This document shows, piece by piece, positions 1-50,069 of a stretch of 63,924 bases of DNA. The stretch is taken from assembly GCF_001194135.2 (NCBI RefSeq), contig NC_068985.1:57084866-57148789 (forward strand), written 5' to 3'. Numbering within the stretch: position 1 is the first letter of the stretch; each line of letters begins with the position of its first letter. The notes beneath the pieces are model-generated. The model was given only the letters and a program-made list of their open reading frames with translations. It ran no database searches and had not been told where the DNA came from. The DNA is from Octopus bimaculoides. Taxonomy: Eukaryota. A program made the position numbers and the translations under genes.

Positions 1-1951
<1,951 letters not shown>

Positions 1952-8146: not shown

Positions 8147-8208
8147 ATTGAGTACGACGTTTCACGGTTAAGAGTATGAAGGTACTCTATTCCGATCTTC
8201 AGCCCAAT
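8147..8208 (-). ncRNA. Minimal type I hammerhead ribozyme (family A)
   Basis: Minus strand: stem I ATTGGG/CTCAAT, CTGAAGA, stem II CGG..AGAGTA/TACTCT..CCG, GAAA, near-palindromic ACGTCGT, GUA cleavage triplet (site 8153/8152). U.U at the base of stem II. Confidence 0.8.
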
Positions 8209-8551
8209 ATTCGAATAAATTTGAAAGTGTCTATACAACTCATGGGAATTTTGACCATGCGACATCAAAAACAATACNNNNNNNNNNNNNNNNNNNNNNN
8301 NNNNNNNNNNNNNNNNNNNNNNNNNNNNNNNNNNNNNNNNNNNNNNNNNNNNNNNNNNNNNNNNNNNNNNNNNNNNNNNNNNNNNNNNNNNNNNNNNNNN
8401 NNNNNNNNNNNNNNNNNNNNNNNNNNNNNNNNNNNNNNNNNNNNNNNNNNNNNNNNNNNNNNNNNNNNNNNNNNNNNNNNNNNNNNNNNNNNNNNNNNNN
8501 NNNNNNNNNNNNNNNNNNNNNNNNNNNNNNNNNNNNNNNNNNNNNNNNNNN

Positions 8552-39538: not shown

Positions 39539-39580
<42 letters not shown>

Positions 39581-39583
39581 CCA

Positions 39584-39956
39584 AAACGTATATTTACCAA
39601 CTAAGTGTGGCTTCCTATACAGGACAGTGCCACTGATGTTTAGAGCCCCAGGAAGGCATCTTCGTCAGCTGGGTAACGACACACATTCTGTGTCCGATTA
39701 ATATTTGCAAGGGGAGGTCATCACTCCCATCTCTAGCTTTACGAGATACACACGGACTCGAGATTATGGGTGGTTACCCATCCTCATCGTGTTTTAATCA
39801 CCAGCTAGATGGGAGAGATGACCTCCCCTCGCATATAGTAATCGGACACAGAATGTGTATCGTTAGCTAGCAAGAGGATATGTCTTCCAGGGGCTATAAA
39901 CATCAGTAGCACTGTCCTGTAATATGATGCAACACTTAGTTGGCAAATGTATGTTC
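39584..39956. mobile_element. MITE-like fold-back (~155-bp imperfect arms, ~65-bp spacer)
   Basis: 39584-39737 is the reverse complement of 39804-39956 with scattered mismatches. Confidence 0.85.
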
Positions 39957-42180: not shown

Positions 42181-43023
42181 TCTTTTTTCTCATACTTTCT
42201 CCCATACGTATCCCAGATGGGTTTTATTGACATGTATCTTATGTATATTTATATTTTATAAGTATTTAAAAAAATATTCACGTGACAATATATATTAATA
42301 TATGTATACGCATTTTAAGTCGAATTTATAAACTTATGGGTATGATTGTCTAATTTGAATTTATATCTTAATTCTTATCTTTTGTCTCGGGTTCGGGCCG
42401 AGCACTTCTTTTTAGCAGATCTATATATTCCGTAAGAAAGAACTGTAATATAATCAAAATAAGCAACAAGGAACAATGCAATCATTACATCAATTTAAAT
42501 TAAATTCTATGTCTTTGTGCTGTTGGGGATGGCCCTGCATTTTAAATTGATGTAATGATTGCATTGTTCAATTAAATGCAGTTGCATGAAACGATCGTGC
42601 TGCATTAACTCTGGATATATTGTTGCTTATTTTGATTTTAATCACTACTTTGAAATTGTTTGGATAATATCGTAATAAATTAGATCGGANNNNNNNNNNN
42701 NNNNNNNNNNNNNNNNNNNNNNNNNNNNNNNNNNNNNNNNNNNNNNNNNNNNNNNNNNNNNNNNNNNNNNNNNNNNNNNNNNNNNNNNNNNNNNNNNNNN
42801 NNNNNNNNNNNNNNNNNNNNNNNNNNNNNNNNNNNNNNNNNNNNNNNNNNNNNNNNNNNNNNNNNNNNNNNNNNNNNNNNNNNNNNNNNNNNNNNNNNNN
42901 NNNNNNNNNNNNNNNNNNNNNNNNNNNNNNNNNNNNNNNNNNNNNNNNNNNNNNNNTCTCTATTATATATATATATCAATTTAAATAAGAGCTATAACAC
43001 AATCTATTGTAAAAACCTTTTAA

Positions 43024-43345: not shown

Positions 43346-44695
43346 ATTTGGAGAGGTTAGTTAACTACATACCTTGATATTACTTTAATTTGGTTTAGCT
43401 TTAACTACATACCGGGATGTTATATTAAATTTGTTTAGCTTTAATTTAATATAACCTTTTCATATTTGTACAATGGTAAGTTTGGTTCCTATTTTATTAA
43501 AATTCCCCTTATAATTCTTTCTATAGATGACATCGAAATTTTGTTTGACTGCTTGCTTCATCGTTTTAATCAATTCATTTATTTAATCTTATTACTAAGT
43601 TAATGTATAATTAAGATTTCGATGGTTGCTATTTGAGAGTAACCTAATTTAGTTTTACTTTGTAATTTATAATTTATAATCTCTTATTTATCTTGATTAC
43701 ATATCCTTTATTGCTCTCTAAAATATTGAAATTTTAAAAATCAATATAACAATTTGATAGGATTAATAACATTGACTGATTAATTTAGATTCTAAAAATA
43801 TATATTATTTTGCCAGATTTACCTCTCTTTGACCATGGAGGAAAAACAATTCTTTTATGTTAATTTTAAATTTATTTTTATTATAATATATTGCAGATAA
43901 CATTTTTTAAGTGAGTTGGGTTTTTGTTCTCAAGTATCTAATAAATTATTTGATATAATGGTGTCGTTTTCAGCTACCTACTTTACATCATAATAGTTAC
44001 TTAATTTTTAATTTATATTTATATGTGAGATAGTAACGATTATATCGTAATATTTGATTACTTTTTGCGTTATCGATTAAATCCTTCCTTCTTTTGATAT
44101 TATTTTTAATATTATATTTGAACCCCATTACTACGTTAATTTATTATAATTTTTCTTAAACTTTGATAGCTGCAATGTGAATGTAACCTAATTTATTTTA
44201 CTTGTTATTATTCATTATTTACAATTGATATTCTCTAATTTATCTTGTTTACATAACCATAAAAAGTCTCATTACTGATCTAAACTTTAAATGAAATATA
44301 ATTATTTGATATGATTATGTACATTTGAGTAGATTATATTTTACATAGGTATTATTTACTAGATTTACCTCTCTTTGACCATTAACTTACAAAAATATTT
44401 TTTTAAATAATATATAGCAGTTTATTTTCTTTCATCGTTTTATTTACTTTCAAAAGTCCAACGGTTTTTATTGAAATTTACATCGTCCCTTACTCGTTCG
44501 CTACTTAACATCCTAGGTTAATATCCTAACTTAACAACACTACTTACTTACTTTACTATGTAACGGTTTTCTTAACCGATATTGTATGTAGTGGCAATAT
44601 GTTTCATGTCATTTCAACCTGTTTATACACATGTAATTTAAGGACAACTATTAATGTTGTCTGTTTTTTACTGTCTGCTATCAATTAATCAAATC

Positions 44696-44765
44696 TGACC
44701 CTGAGGAGATACAATATTCCATATTTTATAACATACAAGAGTGAGTCAGGATATTGCATATGAGA
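44696..44765 (+). ncRNA. Degenerate hammerhead (family E, right arm)
   Basis: CTGAGGA 44701-44707 and stem II are retained. GAAA is mutated to GAGA and stem III is lost. Confidence 0.55.
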
Positions 44766-44831
44766 ATTTTGCTACGTTGATAATAGGCACAATATTGTTA
44801 CCGAATTTTTGGTAGAGATCTATAAATACAA

Positions 44832-44917
<86 letters not shown>

Positions 44918-45120
44918 TAAATTTACATTTGTAAATCTCCCAACGAGAGACGTTCAATAACAGTACTCTAGAGTAAGGATTATTTACCAATATAACGTGG
45001 CAGTCGAATGTGAGGGTAATTTAGCCACAGGAAACATCGTTTCTCGCTGGCTATTCGACACATCTGTGTCCTTATATTTTCGATCAAGTGAGTTTAGCAT
45101 CCCCACTCAACACAAAACAA

Positions 45121-45169
45121 TATCTGTGTATCGTGATTTCGGATTATTTCCCTTCATCAGCTAAGAATA
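45121..45169 (-). ncRNA. Hammerhead family F, copy 1
   Basis: CTGATGA AGGGAAATAATCC GAAA TCACGATA CACAGATA. Stem I 5' strand partly mutated. Confidence 0.65.
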
Positions 45170-45435
45170 ACTTTTTCGTTAGAGGTGGGACTGCTGAATT
45201 CTTGTTCGAAATACATAGTTGCTGATCTAATTAATTGGTAAGTTTGTATTTGTAAATCTCTAAACGATAGACAGCCAGTAACAATACTCTAGAGTAGAGA
45301 TTATTTGCCAACACGACGTCGCAGTCGAATGCTACTGTTACTTAGTCCAAGGAGTCATCGTCTCAAGCTGGCTATACGCCACACTACCTATATTTTCGAA
45401 CAAGGGAGTTTAGCATCCCCACTTAGGACGAAACA

Positions 45436-45486
45436 ATATCTGTGCATCATGATATCTGAGTTATTTCCCTTCATCAGCATAGAATA
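45436..45486 (-). ncRNA. Hammerhead family F, copy 2 (core mutated)
   Basis: TATTCTATG CTGATGA AGGGAAATAACTCA GATA TCATGATG CACAGATA. GAAA is mutated to GATA and the triplet is ATG. Confidence 0.55.
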
Positions 45487-45702
45487 ACTGTTCGGCTAGC
45501 GATAGCGCTGCTAAATTCTTGTTCGAAATATATAGTTTTCAAAGGGGGGTTAGCATCTGTACTCAGTACTAATCAATATCTGTGTATCGCGATTTCTGGG
45601 TTAGATCAGCGTTAGATTGCTGGGTTAGATCAGTGACTGTGTGTCACTTTGAAAACTATATTTCGAACAAGAATGTGATTGCCCCACCTTTAGCCGAACA
45701 GG

Positions 45703-45751
45703 TATTCTGTGCTGATGAAGGGAGATACCCCAGAAATCGCGATAGACAGAT
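45703..45751 (+). ncRNA. Hammerhead family F, inverted copy
   Basis: TATTCTGTG CTGATGA (45712-45718) A GGG AGATA CCC A GAAA (45732-45735), palindrome ATCGCGAT, A, cut after 45743, GACAGATA. Confidence 0.75.
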
Positions 45752-45903
45752 ATTGTTTTGTGATGATTGGGAATGCTAAACTCCCTTGTTCGAAATTATA
45801 AGGACACAGATAGTTTGTCATATAACCGATTGGAGACGATGTTTCCTGTGGCTAAATAACAGTAACTTTCAACTGCCACGAATATTTGGCAAATAGTCTT
45901 TAC

Positions 45904-46034
45904 CATACATACATACATACATACATACATACATACAAACATACATACATACATACATACATACATACATACATACATACATACATGCATACATACATAC
46001 ATACATACATACGTACATACATACATACATACAT
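45904..46034. repeat. (TACA)n microsatellite
   Basis: Tetranucleotide run. Confidence 0.95.
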
Positions 46035-46514
46035 AGTATGCCAAGTTATAAGAATAATATTATATTCAACTGAAGGATTGCTTAAATTTTGTAAAGTATA
46101 TATTAATTACTTTTCATCAACCGTAATATTGGAAGGGACACTGATGTTTCGGCCTGGTTAGCTGTAATGGAACTGTATTTTATTGTTGTTCATCTTAGCT
46201 TTATATAGTATATATGGATGGGTAGAGCTTCATCGAAGGATAATTATGTTGTGGTTAAACTGTGATGGAATATTTTTGTTGAACATATTTGAGCTGCTTT
46301 ATTGTTCATAATTTAGTCATATATGTACAACTTTGTAGTCAAGCTTTTCGATTTCGTTGATGAAAATTTATAAACACACACACTCAAACACATACACACG
46401 TACGCACCGACACACATACACTCTCACAAACAACGACATATATATTTACAAACATAGGTTTCAAACTTTACCTTCTTGAAACACAAATATTACATTTTCT
46501 ACATAACTCTTACT

Positions 46515-47755: not shown

Positions 47756-50069
47756 TATATTTGCCTGTAAAATGGATAAAATTTCTTTACTCCTTTTGGT
47801 GAGAGCTCGAAAGAAATATGTTAGTGAAAACCATGACAAATGTCTTAGAAATGCTTTGTCGTCATAGAAACCTCTCTGAATTCGTTCTGTCTATATCACT
47901 GTAAGAATTTCGAAAATTTAAAATTTCAAATATCAGTCATTGAATTATTGTTTCTCAGGTGAGGAAATACGATGTACTATTCATGCAGTGTTAATTATAT
48001 TATTTAGAAATTACATTGAGATAACCCGTATGGTTTAAGGTCACTGTAACCTTTACTTTTGAGTAGTTAGTAACATTTTCTGACATTGGAATGATGTTAG
48101 AGATTATAAAATTGGAATGAAATAAATCGATTCTTCAATATCATTAATAGTATGGACGTATTTTTCTGATTTAGATTCAGAAACTGAAGTGCTAGAATAT
48201 TATATTGCAAAGCAGTTTGATCGGAACCTTAGTTTGATATCATTTGCCTCATTAATGAAGGGTCGTTCAATCTACCGAAACCAGTCAAAATTGCCCTCAA
48301 ACTACAGCCGCACTGCTAACTATTTCTTATTTCATTAAAGATTTTAACACAGAAATCTGGAAAGTAACCAACTACTATAGAATAATTTCAGGGCGGCACC
48401 AACATTCCTGCCAGAAAATTGTCCTAACAAAACATTAATTATGTAATGGATGAAATATGTATGAATTGTGCAGTTAACTAAATTACTTGCATTATTCCAC
48501 ATACACTTGATATTTGTTCCAGCTTCTATGCACTTTAGTAATGCTGCCCAATGCAATTAAAATTAGCTAACTAACATGTCCAGCTCCAGCGATTAAATGG
48601 ATCTCAGATACATGTAATGTAGTATATACCCTACATATTGATTTCTTCATTTAATGTGAAATTATGATTCATTTCCATTCAGAAGGATTCTTACATGACA
48701 TCATTTTTAATATTTCTTGATATAGACTTAGATATACTAGTTAGCGTCTAGAAGAAATGGCATTCAATTAAGAAGTGAATCATACTCATTGAGAATATGT
48801 AACAACAGTCACGTAATCGAGTTGAAGAATTTCTTGTTCTCTTCATTCAATAATAAAACAGTGCCTGCCAAATACCATATGGCTATGATATAATATAATT
48901 CTATAACGCATAAAGTTATTCGAATCGGTGAGTGTACGTTTCATGTGAGGATATCAGCTAGCTTTCTCTGATAATTTGTACTAAATTGTGCCGAGTTCTA
49001 TAAAATGTCATGTTTGCATTCCATCTACAAGTGTGTGTATATATATATATATATATATNNNNNNNNNNNNNNNNNNNNNNNNNNNNNNNNNNNNNNNNNN
49101 NNNNNNNNNNNNNNNNNNNNNNNNNNNNNNNNNNNNNNNNNNNNNNNNNNNNNNNNNNNNNNNNNNNNNNNNNNNNNNNNNNNNNNNNNNNNNNNNNNNN
49201 NNNNNNNNNNNNNNNNNNNNNNNNNNNNNNNNNNNNNNNNNNNNNNNNNNNNNNNNNNNNNNNNNNNNNNNNNNNNNNNNNNNNNNNNNNNNNNNNNNNN
49301 NNNNNNNNNNNNNNNNNNNNNNNNNNNNNNNNNNNNNNNNNNNNNNNNNNNNNNNNNNNNNNNNNNNNNNNNNNNNNNNNNNNNNNNNNNNNNNNNNNNN
49401 NNNNNNNNNNNNNNNNNNNNNNNNNNNNNNNNNNNNNNNNNNNNNNNNNNNNNNNNNNNNNNNNNNNNNNNNNNNNNNNNNNNNNNNNNNNNNNNNNNNN
49501 NNNNNNNNNNNNNNNNNNNNNNNNNNNNNNNNNNNNNNNNNNNNNNNNNNNNNNNNNNNNNNNNNNNNNNNNNNNNNNNNNNNNNNNNNNNNNNNNNNNN
49601 NNNNNNNNNNNNNNNNNNNNNNNNNNNNNNNNNNNNNNNNNNNNNNNNNNNNNNNNNNNNNNNNNNNNNNNNNNNNNNNNNNNNNNNNNNNNNNNNNNNN
49701 NNNNNNNNNNNNNNNNNNNNNNNNNNNNNNNNNNNNNNNNNNNNNNNNNNNNNNNNNNNNNNNNNNNNNNNNNNNNNNNNNNNNNNNNNNNNNNNNNNNN
49801 NNNNNNNNNNNNNNNNNNNNNNNNNNNNNNNNNNNNNNNNNNNNNNNNNNNNNNNNNNNNNNNNNNNATATATATACACATATATATATTTATGTATATA
49901 TATATATATAGCTTTTGGGAAAAGAACCAAGGTTCATGAACTCATCGATGAAAATCCAATGAACTGATCGCTGAAAATTCAATGTCACATATAGAAAAAT
50001 TAATTAGTAAAAGCACAATAAATAATTATAATATAATACAAAGTAAATATCATAAGATAACGAAAATAA

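What the first reader, a model, noticed from the sequence alone, without database searches (positions are those of the whole stretch)
44921..45903. Retrozyme-like ~320-nt tandem array with one hammerhead per unit, plus an inverted unit
Seen: two direct units about 320 nt apart, a partial third unit and an inverted unit. Each has the consensus TATTCTGTG CTGATGA AGGG..CCCA GAAA TCGCGAT A, cut, CACAGATA. The ribozyme is enclosed by a further inverted repeat (tcgaacaag..cttgttcga). No coding remnant is visible, and copies carry different inactivating mutations while the consensus is intact. Established: tandem repeats of a few hundred nt with minimal type I hammerheads (non-LTR retrozymes) yield linear and circular monomer RNAs in several animals. 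Inference: a cephalopod retrozyme family that may produce ~320-nt circular RNAs.
Basis: partly seen in the sequence, partly recalled or inferred. Interest (0 to 1): 0.85.

Follow-up and report, generated by a model that had tools for sequence, protein, structure and literature searches.

The report
Decayed hammerhead-ribozyme retroelement cluster, Penelope type
A 1-kb non-coding cluster of four old copies of a ~315-nt repeat, each built around a minimal hammerhead ribozyme, looks like the product of Penelope-like retrotransposon machinery; this is a known kind of element and the locus is now inactive.

Summary
Bases 44917-45903 hold two full direct units (316 and 313 nt, minus strand), an internal fragment and an inverted unit, 76-79% identical to each other. 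Each carries a type I hammerhead of the minimal, dimer-dependent kind described for Penelope-like elements (PLEs). Every copy has a different lesion, and the majority consensus restores the core.

The layout is an irregular compound insertion, not a regular satellite. The copies lie head-to-head with their 3' ends facing outward. Four of five 3' ends abut TA/CA microsatellites. There are two alternative 3' termini. These are PLE signatures. I found three more pieces in the window: a 43-nt 3'-end fragment (44793-44835) and a diverged palindromic pair (39583-39956).

No PLE coding sequence exists anywhere in the window.

The best reading is a non-autonomous, retrozyme-like derivative moved by PLE enzymes. 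A truncated autonomous PLE cannot be excluded without the genome.

This locus cannot now release monomers, because one of the two tandem ribozymes is dead. Circular RNA, family copy number and cephalopod origin could not be tested. An apparent helix I covariation turned out to be an artefact of an inverted duplication, and I withdrew it.

This is a new member of a known kind, of modest interest.

The parts
44793..44835 (+). F: isolated copy of the last ~45 nt (3' 'tail') of the unit. It ends at the (AC)n(AT)n microsatellite from the left, in the opposite orientation to unit A.
   Evidence: (I7), 79 and 80: local alignment score of 19 against 9.4 +/- 1.8 for shuffles (maximum 16 in 500).
44834..44916 (.). 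(AC)25(AT)16 microsatellite lying between the 3' ends of F and A. Probable insertion target.
44917..45232 (-). Unit A (316 nt including the 17-nt filler at 45221-45237). It has the long 3' end; the 55-nt tail is at 44917-44972.
45121..45169 (-). Hammerhead of unit A. The core is complete and there is no extra A before GAAA. Helix I has 2 mismatches. Loop 3 is UCACGA, no longer palindromic. The predicted cut is after A at 45129.
45233..45545 (-). Unit B (313 nt), with the long 3' end (tail at 45238-45293). Its 5' end, CTTTGAAAACTATAT, is identical to that of D.
   Evidence: (I11).
45437..45486 (-). Hammerhead of unit B, dead. GAAA is changed to GAUA, position 17 is G, helix II is broken, and loop 3 is UCAUGA.
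45531..45610 (-). Fragment C. It covers the 3' half of a hammerhead (45577-45610, missing GAAGGGA) plus about 55 nt after the cleavage site, and then runs straight into B.
   Evidence: E = 4.5e-8.
45611..45646 (.). Head-to-head junction or filler between C and D. It contains one copy of a 24-nt-spaced direct duplication (45591-45609 / 45615-45633).
   Evidence: D5; it also aligns as part of D's extended palindrome.
45647..45903 (+). Unit D, inverted relative to A and B. It has the short 3' end (no 55-nt tail), which meets (CATA)n directly.
45703..45752 (+). Hammerhead of unit D, the best preserved. The core is complete, loop 3 is UCGCGA, and the only lesion is C1.1 changed to G. The predicted cut is between 45744 and 45745.
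45904..46035 (.). (CATA)33 microsatellite abutting the 3' end of D.
39583..39787 (-). E: a diverged copy (about 65-69% identical to A, B and D). It runs from the hammerhead core to the short 3' end, which meets (TA)n at 39555-39580. The core is dead (C3 changed to A, G12 changed to U). The hammerhead remnant is at 39748-39795.
   Evidence: (score of 34 against 12.1 +/- 1.6 for shuffles).
39788..39956 (+). G: an inverted partner of E (79% identical to E's post-cleavage part). Together they form a ~375-nt palindrome. G's homology starts within 0-5 nt of the predicted cleavage site.
   Evidence: (E = 2.4e-28).

Best explanation
This is a decayed compound insertion of a short (about 260-316 nt), non-coding retroelement built around a hammerhead ribozyme. 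The family most likely depends on Penelope-like element (PLE) enzymes supplied in trans. That makes it a 'non-LTR retrozyme' in the sense of Cervera & de la Pena 2020 and Li et al. 2026.

How the family would work (inferred):
1. Source loci are transcribed through more than one unit.
2. The ribozyme reads CUGAUGA-A-GGG..CCC-A-GAAA-UCGCGA-U-A, with the cut before CACAG. It has a 6-bp helix I, and its helix III is reduced to one A-U pair closing a palindromic loop. It should therefore be weak alone.
3. Two ribozymes pair through AUCGCGAU to form a double hammerhead and cut after A17. This leaves unit-length RNA with 5'-OH and 2',3'-cyclic phosphate ends, which a tRNA ligase could close into a circle.
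4. PLE reverse transcriptase/endonuclease nicks TA/CA-rich microsatellite DNA on both strands and primes cDNA synthesis on both.
5. That yields head-to-head copies with their 3' ends facing outward. Template switching or multimeric templates give the tandem copies. Two start sites for reverse transcription give the long and the short 3' ends.

What is shown here: the anatomy, the ribozyme motif, the junctions, the microsatellite contacts and the absence of coding sequence.

What is inferred: cleavage, circles, dependence on PLE enzymes and the order of events.

The locus itself is now dead. Copies differ by about 22%, and of the two tandem ribozymes, B's has lost A13 and carries G at position 17.
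For: Ribozyme motif:
- The hammerhead core is complete in D and A and is restored in the majority consensus.
- It has features listed for metazoan PLE minimal hammerheads in PMC4209133: a base between A9 and 10.1, and a 1-bp helix III with a palindromic loop.
- The same general design came up when my own regex scan was run on two PLE loci fetched here. It sits 50-320 nt after the PLE ORF in L003 and L004.
- Two consensus ribozymes are predicted to co-fold at -31.9 kcal/mol, against 2 x -11.5 for monomers, with an 8-bp intermolecular helix III.

Architecture:
- The copies are arranged <-A<-B<-C | D->.
- The second locus, E|G, is also head-to-head.
- L003 and L004 show the same head-to-head habit for real PLEs.
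- PMC8557442 describes tandem plus inverted 5'-truncated copies and a microsatellite bias ((CA)n, (TA)n) for PLEs.
- PMC11167929 shows that a PLE protein cleaves and extends both DNA strands, prefers AT-rich DNA, and starts reverse transcription at two internal sites. That explains an optional 3' tail.

3' ends:
- Four of five 3' ends (F, A, D, E) touch a TA/CA microsatellite. Each has roughly a 1% chance of doing so at random.
- The long (A, B, F) and short (D, E) 3' ends differ by 55 nt.

Non-autonomy:
- There is no PLE coding similarity in the window.
- B and D share an identical 15-nt 5' end, and A starts within about 10 nt of it. Random 5' truncation of a 3-kb element would not do this.
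- Li et al. (10.64898/2026.07.22.740005) find vertebrate retrozymes to be relatives of PLE pseudo-LTRs.
Against: - No other family members could be retrieved, so copy number, a true consensus and any link to an autonomous PLE are unknown.
- The junctions between units are not alike, so a clean multimeric or circular template is not demonstrated.
- Four of five copies have an extra A between C11.1 and G12, which amounts to an A.A at the base of helix II. This departs from the published PLE consensus, and its effect on activity is unknown.
- The ribozyme region is not significantly better conserved than the rest of the unit (24% vs 35% variable columns, p = 0.18).
- The only covariation I found was an artefact of an inverted duplication.
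- G's 3' end does not touch a microsatellite.
- The 55-nt 'tail' is longer than the 30-40 bp described for PLEs.
- By the operational definition of Li et al. (a TRF-called tandem with two consecutive complete hammerheads), this locus does not qualify.
Confidence: 0.6

Rival explanations
1. The units are 5'-truncated ends (untranslated region or pseudo-LTR with its hammerhead) of an ordinary autonomous PLE of the same genome. They were inserted repeatedly or in one complex event. No separate non-autonomous family exists.
For: - The ribozyme is the minimal type described for PLEs, and PMC4209133 states that most dispersed minimal hammerheads are probably truncated PLEs, sometimes as pairs 100-700 bp apart on opposite strands.
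- L003 holds exactly such a 466-nt inverted truncated PLE copy carrying one hammerhead-like motif next to a full element.
- PLEs are reported as abundant in octopus genomes, with an old expansion (PMC13282606, PMC8967140), if the window is from an octopus.
Against: - B and D begin at the same base with an identical 15-mer, and A begins within about 10 nt of it.
- A and B have nearly equal lengths (316 and 313 nt).
- There is no coding similarity upstream of the ribozyme or anywhere else in 64 kb. The upstream part is only about 70 nt, and PLE untranslated regions can be 300 nt long (L003), so this point is weak.
Confidence: 0.25
2. The cluster arose by DNA-level duplication (unequal crossing-over plus an inverted duplication) of a single old insertion. 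The repeat structure then says nothing about retrotransposition or RNA processing.
For: - All three pairwise identities are similar (76-79%), as expected if the copies arose together.
- The window is rich in microsatellites, which promote rearrangement.
- The E|G locus is a plain palindrome.
Against: - The junctions carry fillers and differ from each other.
- Copies end at defined alternative 3' termini that meet microsatellites at four separate places, including a locus 5 kb away.
- A separate 43-nt 3'-end fragment (F) is hard to obtain by unequal crossing-over.
Confidence: 0.08
3. It is a SINE-like element with an internal RNA polymerase III promoter followed by a hammerhead, like Sm-alpha of schistosomes. 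It would be moved by LINE enzymes rather than by PLE enzymes, and the microsatellites would be its 3' tails.
For: - The 3' ends joined to simple repeats resemble LINE/SINE tails.
- The 3' arm contains GTTCGAA, the core of a B box.
- Octopus genomes are reported to be rich in SINEs (PMC13282606), if the window is from an octopus.
Against: - ARAGORN finds no tRNA-like sequence.
- The best A-box and B-box matches have 2-3 mismatches, the same as random 300-nt pieces of the window.
- Head-to-head pairs and an optional tail point to PLE enzymes.
Confidence: 0.04
4. The hammerhead-like motif is a chance resemblance inside an ordinary repeat. No ribozyme was ever involved.
For: - No Rfam hit.
- No valid covariation.
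- A relaxed descriptor finds about 3-4 chance candidates per window.
- There is an extra A next to G12.
Against: - All invariant core bases are present in two copies and in the consensus.
- The motif sits exactly where helix I is provided by the unit's palindrome.
- The extra base after A9 and the 8-nt palindrome AUCGCGAU match published PLE hammerhead traits that the descriptor did not ask for (PMC4209133).
- Rfam also misses the hammerhead-like motifs located beside PLE ORFs.
Confidence: 0.03

Closest known systems
Minimal hammerheads of Penelope-like elements and their truncated genomic copies (Cervera & de la Pena 2014, PMC4209133; Lunse et al. 2016, cited in PMC6765202)
   Same: - Type I topology.
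- An extra base between A9 and helix II.
- Helix III reduced to one pair with a palindromic loop, implying action as a dimer.
- Dispersed single copies, and pairs on opposite strands a few hundred bp apart.
- Head-to-head and tandem layouts.
- Contact with microsatellites.
   Different: - No PLE ORF within 64 kb.
- Helix II is short (3 bp, against the 6-8 bp described) and is flanked by unpaired A on both sides.
- Loop 3 has 6 nt rather than 0-4.
- The core sits at the centre of a 50-90-nt imperfect palindrome.
Metazoan non-LTR retrozymes (Cervera & de la Pena 2020, PMC7229834; Li, Clavereau & Pollet 2026, 10.64898/2026.07.22.740005)
   Same: - Unit size falls within 150-450 bp.
- Non-coding, with low G+C.
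- One type I hammerhead per unit, with head-to-tail copies.
- Predicted self-paired RNA (z = -4.4 and -2.7 for the D and A whole units; z = -3.4 for the 158-nt hammerhead domain of B).
- Proposed dependence on PLEs.
- The newt and axolotl ribozymes likewise have a 1-bp helix III with a palindromic loop and need dimers. HHR_Amex2 has a mismatch at the base of helix II.
   Different: - Only two full units plus fragments, with irregular junctions and an inverted copy.
- No loop1-loop2 tertiary contacts.
- Invertebrate retrozymes described so far (coral, mussel) carry canonical ribozymes that work as single motifs, with efficient cleavage in coral (about 0.8 per min) and slower cleavage in mussel (about 0.1 per min).
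- No RNA evidence here.
- The locus fails the 'two consecutive complete hammerheads' rule.
Sm-alpha / Sj-alpha SINE-like hammerhead elements of schistosomes (reviewed in PMC6765202)
   Same: Short, non-coding, repeated element with a hammerhead.
   Different: No polymerase III A or B boxes above background and no tRNA-like part.
Plant LTR retrozymes (PMC4918200)
   Same: Non-autonomous retroelements whose RNA is cut by hammerheads and circularised.
   Different: Plant retrozymes have type III hammerheads in long terminal repeats, a primer-binding site, a polypurine tract and 4-bp target duplications. None of these is seen here.

Membership tests
Hammerhead ribozyme, type I | Invariant core CUGANGA ... 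GAAA ... with U16.1 and a non-G base at 17 | tested here: met
   The core is complete in D (45703-45752) and A (45121-45169). It is broken in B (A13 changed to U, G17), in C (deletion) and in E (C3 changed to A, G12 changed to U). The majority consensus is complete.
Hammerhead ribozyme, type I | Helix I formed by the sequences flanking the core (open end through helix I) | tested here: met
   UCUGUG/CACAGA gives 6 bp in the consensus, 5 of 6 in D and B, and 4 of 6 in A.
Hammerhead ribozyme, type I | Helix II closing directly on the core with G10.1-C11.1 | tested here: inconclusive
   GGG/CCC pairs are present, but B, C, D and E have an extra A before G12 (an A.A at the base). Only copy A has CC directly followed by GAAA.
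Hammerhead ribozyme, type I | Match to the Rfam hammerhead covariance models | tested here: not met
   No hit at the gathering threshold or at E <= 10. Control: the same models give no hit for the hammerhead-like motifs that my own regex scan located next to PLE ORFs in L003 and L004. The test is therefore uninformative for minimal variants.
Hammerhead ribozyme, type I | Self-cleavage at the predicted site | not testable with these tools
   This needs in vitro transcription of monomer and dimer constructs.
PLE-type minimal hammerhead (PMC4209133) | A base between A9 and 10.1; helix III absent or 1-2 bp with palindromic positions, allowing a double hammerhead | tested here: met
   CUGAUGA-A-GGG is present. 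A15.1-UCGCGA-U16.1 gives the palindrome AUCGCGAU, intact in C and D. The co-fold of two copies forms an 8-bp helix III at -31.9 kcal/mol, against -23 for two monomers.
PLE-type minimal hammerhead (PMC4209133) | Long helix II (6-8 bp) | tested here: not met
   Helix II has 3 bp in A, B and D and 4 bp in E. L003 and L004 have 5-7 bp.
Metazoan non-LTR retrozyme | Head-to-tail repeats of 150-450 bp, each with a type I hammerhead; no ORF, LTR, PBS or PPT; G+C below 50% | tested here: met
   A and B are 316 and 313 nt, head to tail, and each carries a hammerhead. No ORF similarity was found. G+C is about 32% for 44001-46000. There are only two full units.
Metazoan non-LTR retrozyme | Operational rule of Li et al. 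2026: a TRF-called tandem with at least two consecutive complete hammerheads | tested here: not met
   TRF reports no ~317-nt period even at score 30. The hammerhead of B is incomplete.
Metazoan non-LTR retrozyme | Expressed as unit-length linear and circular RNA | not testable with these tools
   No transcriptome data were available.
Metazoan non-LTR retrozyme | Many genomic copies; autonomous PLEs in the same genome | not testable with these tools
   The window holds seven pieces of the family (A-G). PLEs are reported in octopus genomes (PMC13282606, PMC8967140), but the organism is unverified.
Penelope-like element (autonomous) or a truncated copy of one | ORF with a telomerase-like reverse transcriptase and a GIY-YIG endonuclease | tested here: not met
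   TBLASTN with 120 PLE proteins against the whole window gives a best E of 0.1. The PLE profile against 2736 translated chunks does not place the units in the top 40.
Penelope-like element (autonomous) or a truncated copy of one | Partial tandems with an adjacent inverted 5'-truncated copy (head-to-head) | tested here: met
   The arrangement <-A<-B<-C | D-> and the E|G pair. L003 and L004 are comparators.
Penelope-like element (autonomous) or a truncated copy of one | Insertion bias for AT-rich DNA or (TA)n/(CA)n microsatellites | tested here: met
   The 3' ends of F, A, D and E abut (AC)n(AT)n, (CATA)n or (TA)n. G's does not.
Penelope-like element (autonomous) or a truncated copy of one | Optional 30-40-bp 3' 'tail' present in only some copies | tested here: inconclusive
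   A 55-nt extension is present in A, B and F and absent in D and E. The pattern matches, but the length is greater.
Penelope-like element (autonomous) or a truncated copy of one | Sequence continuity of the unit with the pseudo-LTR of a full PLE of the same genome | not testable with these tools
   No PLE from this genome could be retrieved. The PLE proteins found are from unnamed or other organisms.
Schistosome-type SINE-like hammerhead element | Internal polymerase III A and B boxes, or a tRNA-derived 5' part | tested here: not met
   ARAGORN finds none. Box matches are no better than background.

The most novel reading that the evidence does not exclude
The host (possibly a cephalopod) carries a lineage-specific, still active family of PLE-dependent retrozymes with three properties. 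Its ribozyme is the dimer-dependent minimal type with an A.A at the base of helix II. Its unit was born from a head-to-head PLE-type insertion, which created helix I and the long hairpin around the core (the E|G locus would be such a structure caught in the making). It yields abundant ~260-320-nt linear and circular RNAs. G's 5' end at the predicted cleavage site would then be a genomic footprint of ribozyme cutting in vivo.
Probability: 0.15. Interest if true: 0.55.

Novelty: new member of a known kind. Interest (0 to 1): 0.3.

Why it matters
If the family proves abundant and expressed, it would extend hammerhead-based small circular RNAs to a group not mentioned for them in the papers I could search. 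It would also give an invertebrate example in which a retrozyme-like repeat carries the minimal PLE-type ribozyme. That supports the recent proposal that animal retrozymes are non-autonomous offshoots of PLE pseudo-LTRs.

The locus is also a compact illustration of PLE-style insertion: both strands primed, a microsatellite target, and two 3' ends.

As it stands, it is an old, dead insertion of a known kind. Its value is mainly for repeat annotation.

Tried and rejected
1. Rfam at the gathering threshold and at E <= 10 gave no hammerhead hit. The only hits were spurious microRNA-like matches to (CATA)n and (AC)n. A control showed that the models also miss the hammerhead-like motifs located next to PLE ORFs.
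2. TRF does not see the 317-nt period.
3. I searched the protein database with an alignment of the antisense ORF that is open in A, B, D and C (A2), hoping to catch spurious gene calls on other copies. No hits.
4. Exact-pattern scans:
   - Metagenome contigs gave 2 chance matches with no helices.
   - Viral contigs gave nothing.
   - Prokaryote genome contigs gave nothing.
5. Organism identification failed. An exact look-up of a window ORF found nothing. A homology search with a 177-aa ORF found 4 unnamed ENA proteins. Cephalopod origin is therefore not verified.
6. Faint TBLASTN matches of PLE N-terminal regions to unit D (E of 0.2-3) looked colinear. They overlap in different frames and run into the microsatellite. 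A PLE profile did not support them. Rejected as noise.
7. Helix I covariation in copy E and its very stable hairpin (z = -9.7) are withdrawn. nhmmer showed that the locus is an inverted duplication E|G, which produces the complementarity trivially.
8. A test for stronger conservation of the ribozyme than of the rest of the unit was not significant (p = 0.18).
9. A polymerase III promoter or tRNA origin is not supported.
10. No supplementary files were held for the two key PLE papers, and Lunse et al. 2016 is not held.

Note on method: the PLE protein bait was a consensus-like sequence that I wrote from memory of PLE ORFs. It served only as a query. The 120 proteins it retrieved (up to 58% identity, E as low as 5.6e-160 for the best, with RVT_1, GIY-YIG and related Pfam hits) are real database entries.
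Full report
**What is there**

The stretch 44917-45903 lies in an N-free piece of a draft, AT-rich, microsatellite-rich scaffold. There are 19 N gaps in the window, and the nearest are at 42690-42956 and 49059-49867.

Direct and inverted repeats are found by four methods:
- The repeat finder;
- BLASTN;
- MAFFT;
- nhmmer (E about 1e-79 for the three long copies).

Read in the sense of the ribozyme, the minus strand carries fragment C (45531-45610), unit B (45233-45545, 313 nt) and unit A (44917-45232, 316 nt) in that order. The plus strand carries unit D (45647-45903). The layout is therefore <-A<-B<-C | D->: head to head, with 3' ends facing outward. Pairwise identities are 76-79%. Copies that different cannot be an assembly duplication.

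**The ribozyme**

In D it reads UAUUCUGUG CUGAUGA A GGGAGAUACCCC A GAAA UCGCGA U A | GACAGAUA. This is a type I hammerhead with these parts:
- a 6-bp helix I;
- an extra A after A9;
- a 3-bp helix II;
- a helix III reduced to the A15.1-U16.1 pair, closing the palindromic loop UCGCGA.

The extra base after A9 and the palindromic mini-helix III are traits that Cervera and de la Pena list for the minimal hammerheads of Penelope-like elements (PLEs) (PMC4209133). I saw the same general design 50-320 nt downstream of real PLE ORFs in two loci fetched for comparison. L003 has CUGAUGA-A-GGCAGCC..GGUUGCC-GAAA-CG-UC, and L004 is similar.

Two consensus ribozymes are predicted to co-fold into a double hammerhead with an 8-bp helix III (AUCGCGAU). 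The energy is -31.9 kcal/mol, against -11.5 for each monomer. This fits the dimer model of PMC4209133 and PMC7229834.

- A has two helix I mismatches and a loop that is no longer palindromic.
- B has A13 changed to U, G at position 17 and a broken helix II.
- C lacks seven bases.
- D has only C1.1 changed to G.

One correction is needed. B, C, D and the distant copy E carry an extra A between helix II and G12, so the family consensus has an A.A at the base of helix II. A U.U in that place is described for one axolotl retrozyme ribozyme (PMC7229834). The effect here is unknown.

Rfam gives no hammerhead hit, but it gives none for the PLE hammerhead motifs of L003 and L004 either.

**Further pieces of the family in the window**

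- *F (44793-44835, plus strand).* This is a copy of the last ~45 nt of units A and B. It ends at the (AC)n(AT)n microsatellite from the left, while A ends at it from the right.
- *E (39787 to 39583, minus strand) and G (39788 to 39956, plus strand).* nhmmer with the unit profile showed that the 39.6-kb locus is a ~375-nt palindrome made of these two copies. Their post-cleavage parts are 79% identical, and one dead ribozyme core sits at the centre.

**How the copies end**

D and E stop at the same place (..UUGGYAAAUA..). A, B and F run 55 nt further.

Four of the five 3' ends (F, A, D, E) touch a TA/CA microsatellite directly. With 46 perfect arrays in 55.8 kb of non-N sequence, the chance for one end is about 1%. 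G's end does not touch one.

B and D start with the same 15 bases, and A starts about 10 nt further in, behind a 17-nt filler.

**What it is not**

There is no coding remnant:
- Stop-to-stop frames around the array look random.
- TBLASTN with 120 PLE proteins gives nothing better than E = 0.1 anywhere in the window.
- A PLE profile scored against 2736 translated chunks does not place the units among its top 40.
- Faint matches of PLE N-terminal regions to unit D overlap in different frames and run into the microsatellite. I treat them as noise.

There is no tRNA-like part and no polymerase III box above background.

**Mechanism**

The anatomy fits what is known of PLE insertion:
- Craig et al. 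describe partial tandems, an adjacent inverted 5'-truncated copy, an optional tail at one end and a bias for (CA)n and (TA)n (PMC8557442).
- Frangieh et al. show that a purified PLE protein nicks and extends both DNA strands, prefers AT-rich DNA, and starts reverse transcription at two internal sites, which explains the tail (PMC11167929).
- Priming on both strands gives exactly the head-to-head layout with outward 3' ends seen here and at E|G. L003 and L004 show it for full PLEs.

I therefore read the cluster as the product of PLE enzymes acting on a short hammerhead-bearing RNA at a TA/CA microsatellite.

The shared 5' ends, the equal unit lengths and the lack of any ORF favour a defined, non-autonomous element. 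That is a retrozyme in the sense of PMC7229834 and of Li et al., who find vertebrate retrozymes to be relatives of PLE pseudo-LTRs (10.64898/2026.07.22.740005).

The alternative is that these are truncated ends of an autonomous PLE. It cannot be excluded, because I could not reach the host genome.

**State of the locus**

Pairwise divergence of about 22-24% corresponds to a Jukes-Cantor distance of about 0.26-0.29 between copies, or about 0.13-0.15 per copy if they were identical when inserted. If the host is an octopus, this falls within the range of the old TE expansions, including that of PLEs, reported there (PMC13282606). This is an inference with several assumptions.

Substitutions are spread evenly. 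The ribozyme is not significantly better kept than the rest of the unit.

Releasing a monomer needs two working ribozymes in the same orientation. B's is dead and A's has a weakened helix I. This locus should therefore not produce unit-length or circular RNA.

**A withdrawn result**

Copy E seemed to keep helix I through four double changes and to fold into a very stable hairpin (z = -9.7). Once G was found, both are explained by the inverted duplication itself, so they are not evidence of selection on RNA structure.

The same caution applies to the units of the array. In A, B and D the 5' half is an imperfect reverse complement of the post-cleavage half over 50-90 nt. This may reflect selection for a rod-like RNA, as in retrozymes, or descent from a head-to-head insertion like E|G. 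I cannot tell which.

**Limits**

No other family member was found by any route available:
- a protein search with translated unit ORFs;
- exact-pattern scans of metagenome, viral and prokaryote collections.

The organism was not identified. The papers I could search contain no report of hammerheads or retrozymes in cephalopods. That is an absence in that library only.

**Verdict**

This is a new member of a known kind (a PLE-type minimal hammerhead repeat, retrozyme-like), old and inactive at this locus, and of modest interest.

Noticed in passing
window 8147-8208, minus strand: A second, unrelated candidate minimal hammerhead: AUUGGG CUGAAGA U CGG..(long helix II, 3+6 bp)..CCG U GAAA CGUCG U A | CUCAAU. 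It has a 6-bp helix I and a U.U at the base of helix II. It lies next to an N gap (8278-8551). The relaxed descriptor that found it is expected to give about 3 chance hits per window, and Rfam gives no hit.
   Followed up: partly
window 39788 (5' end of copy G): G's homology to the family begins within 0-5 nt of the predicted ribozyme cleavage site (CGUGU). This could be the footprint of reverse transcription running off a ribozyme-cut RNA, or only microhomology at the E|G junction. It is a single case.
   Followed up: partly
window 45025-45222 (+), 45293-45484 (+), 45693-45851 (-): A reading frame antisense to the ribozyme is open for 53-66 codons in A, B and D (shared ..YIFEQGSLASPL.TKQYLCI.IS..). 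It has no homologue in the protein database and is probably chance.
   Followed up: yes
window 45591-45633: A 19-nt direct duplication with 24-nt spacing (GATTTCTGGGTTAGATCAG / GATTGCTGGGTTAGATCAG) at the head-to-head junction between C and D.
   Followed up: partly
window 835-1383, minus strand: Remnant of a pogo/Tc5-type transposase DNA-binding region (Pfam HTH_Tnp_Tc5 at E = 4e-4, which is 20.8 bits and just below its curated cutoff of 22.2; BrkDBD at E = 2e-6). Other ORF-like stretches looked by eye like LINE or mariner remnants (16.7-21 kb, 60.3-63.4 kb). Those I scanned (seven fragments within 4.7-63.4 kb) gave no Pfam hit, and the mariner-like stretch near 61.5 kb was not scanned.
   Followed up: partly
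window 45962-46048 and 44806-44936: Sub-threshold Rfam 'microRNA' and scaRNA matches (mir-297 at 54.7 bits against a gathering score of 90, and others) fall entirely on the (CATA)n and (AC)n(AT)n microsatellites. They are artefacts of simple sequence.
   Followed up: yes
L003 3521-6313 and L004 1895-6035 (ENA contigs of unnamed eukaryote assemblies): Young PLE insertions used as comparators. L003 has a full element with a 466-nt inverted truncated copy (99.6% identical). L004 is a 4.1-kb perfect head-to-head palindrome (99.5%). Each copy ends about 50 nt after its hammerhead cleavage site.
   Followed up: partly
whole window: There are 19 runs of N and 85 TRF rows, mostly di- to tetranucleotide repeats. 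It is a short-read draft scaffold, and the organism could not be identified with the tools at hand.
   Followed up: partly
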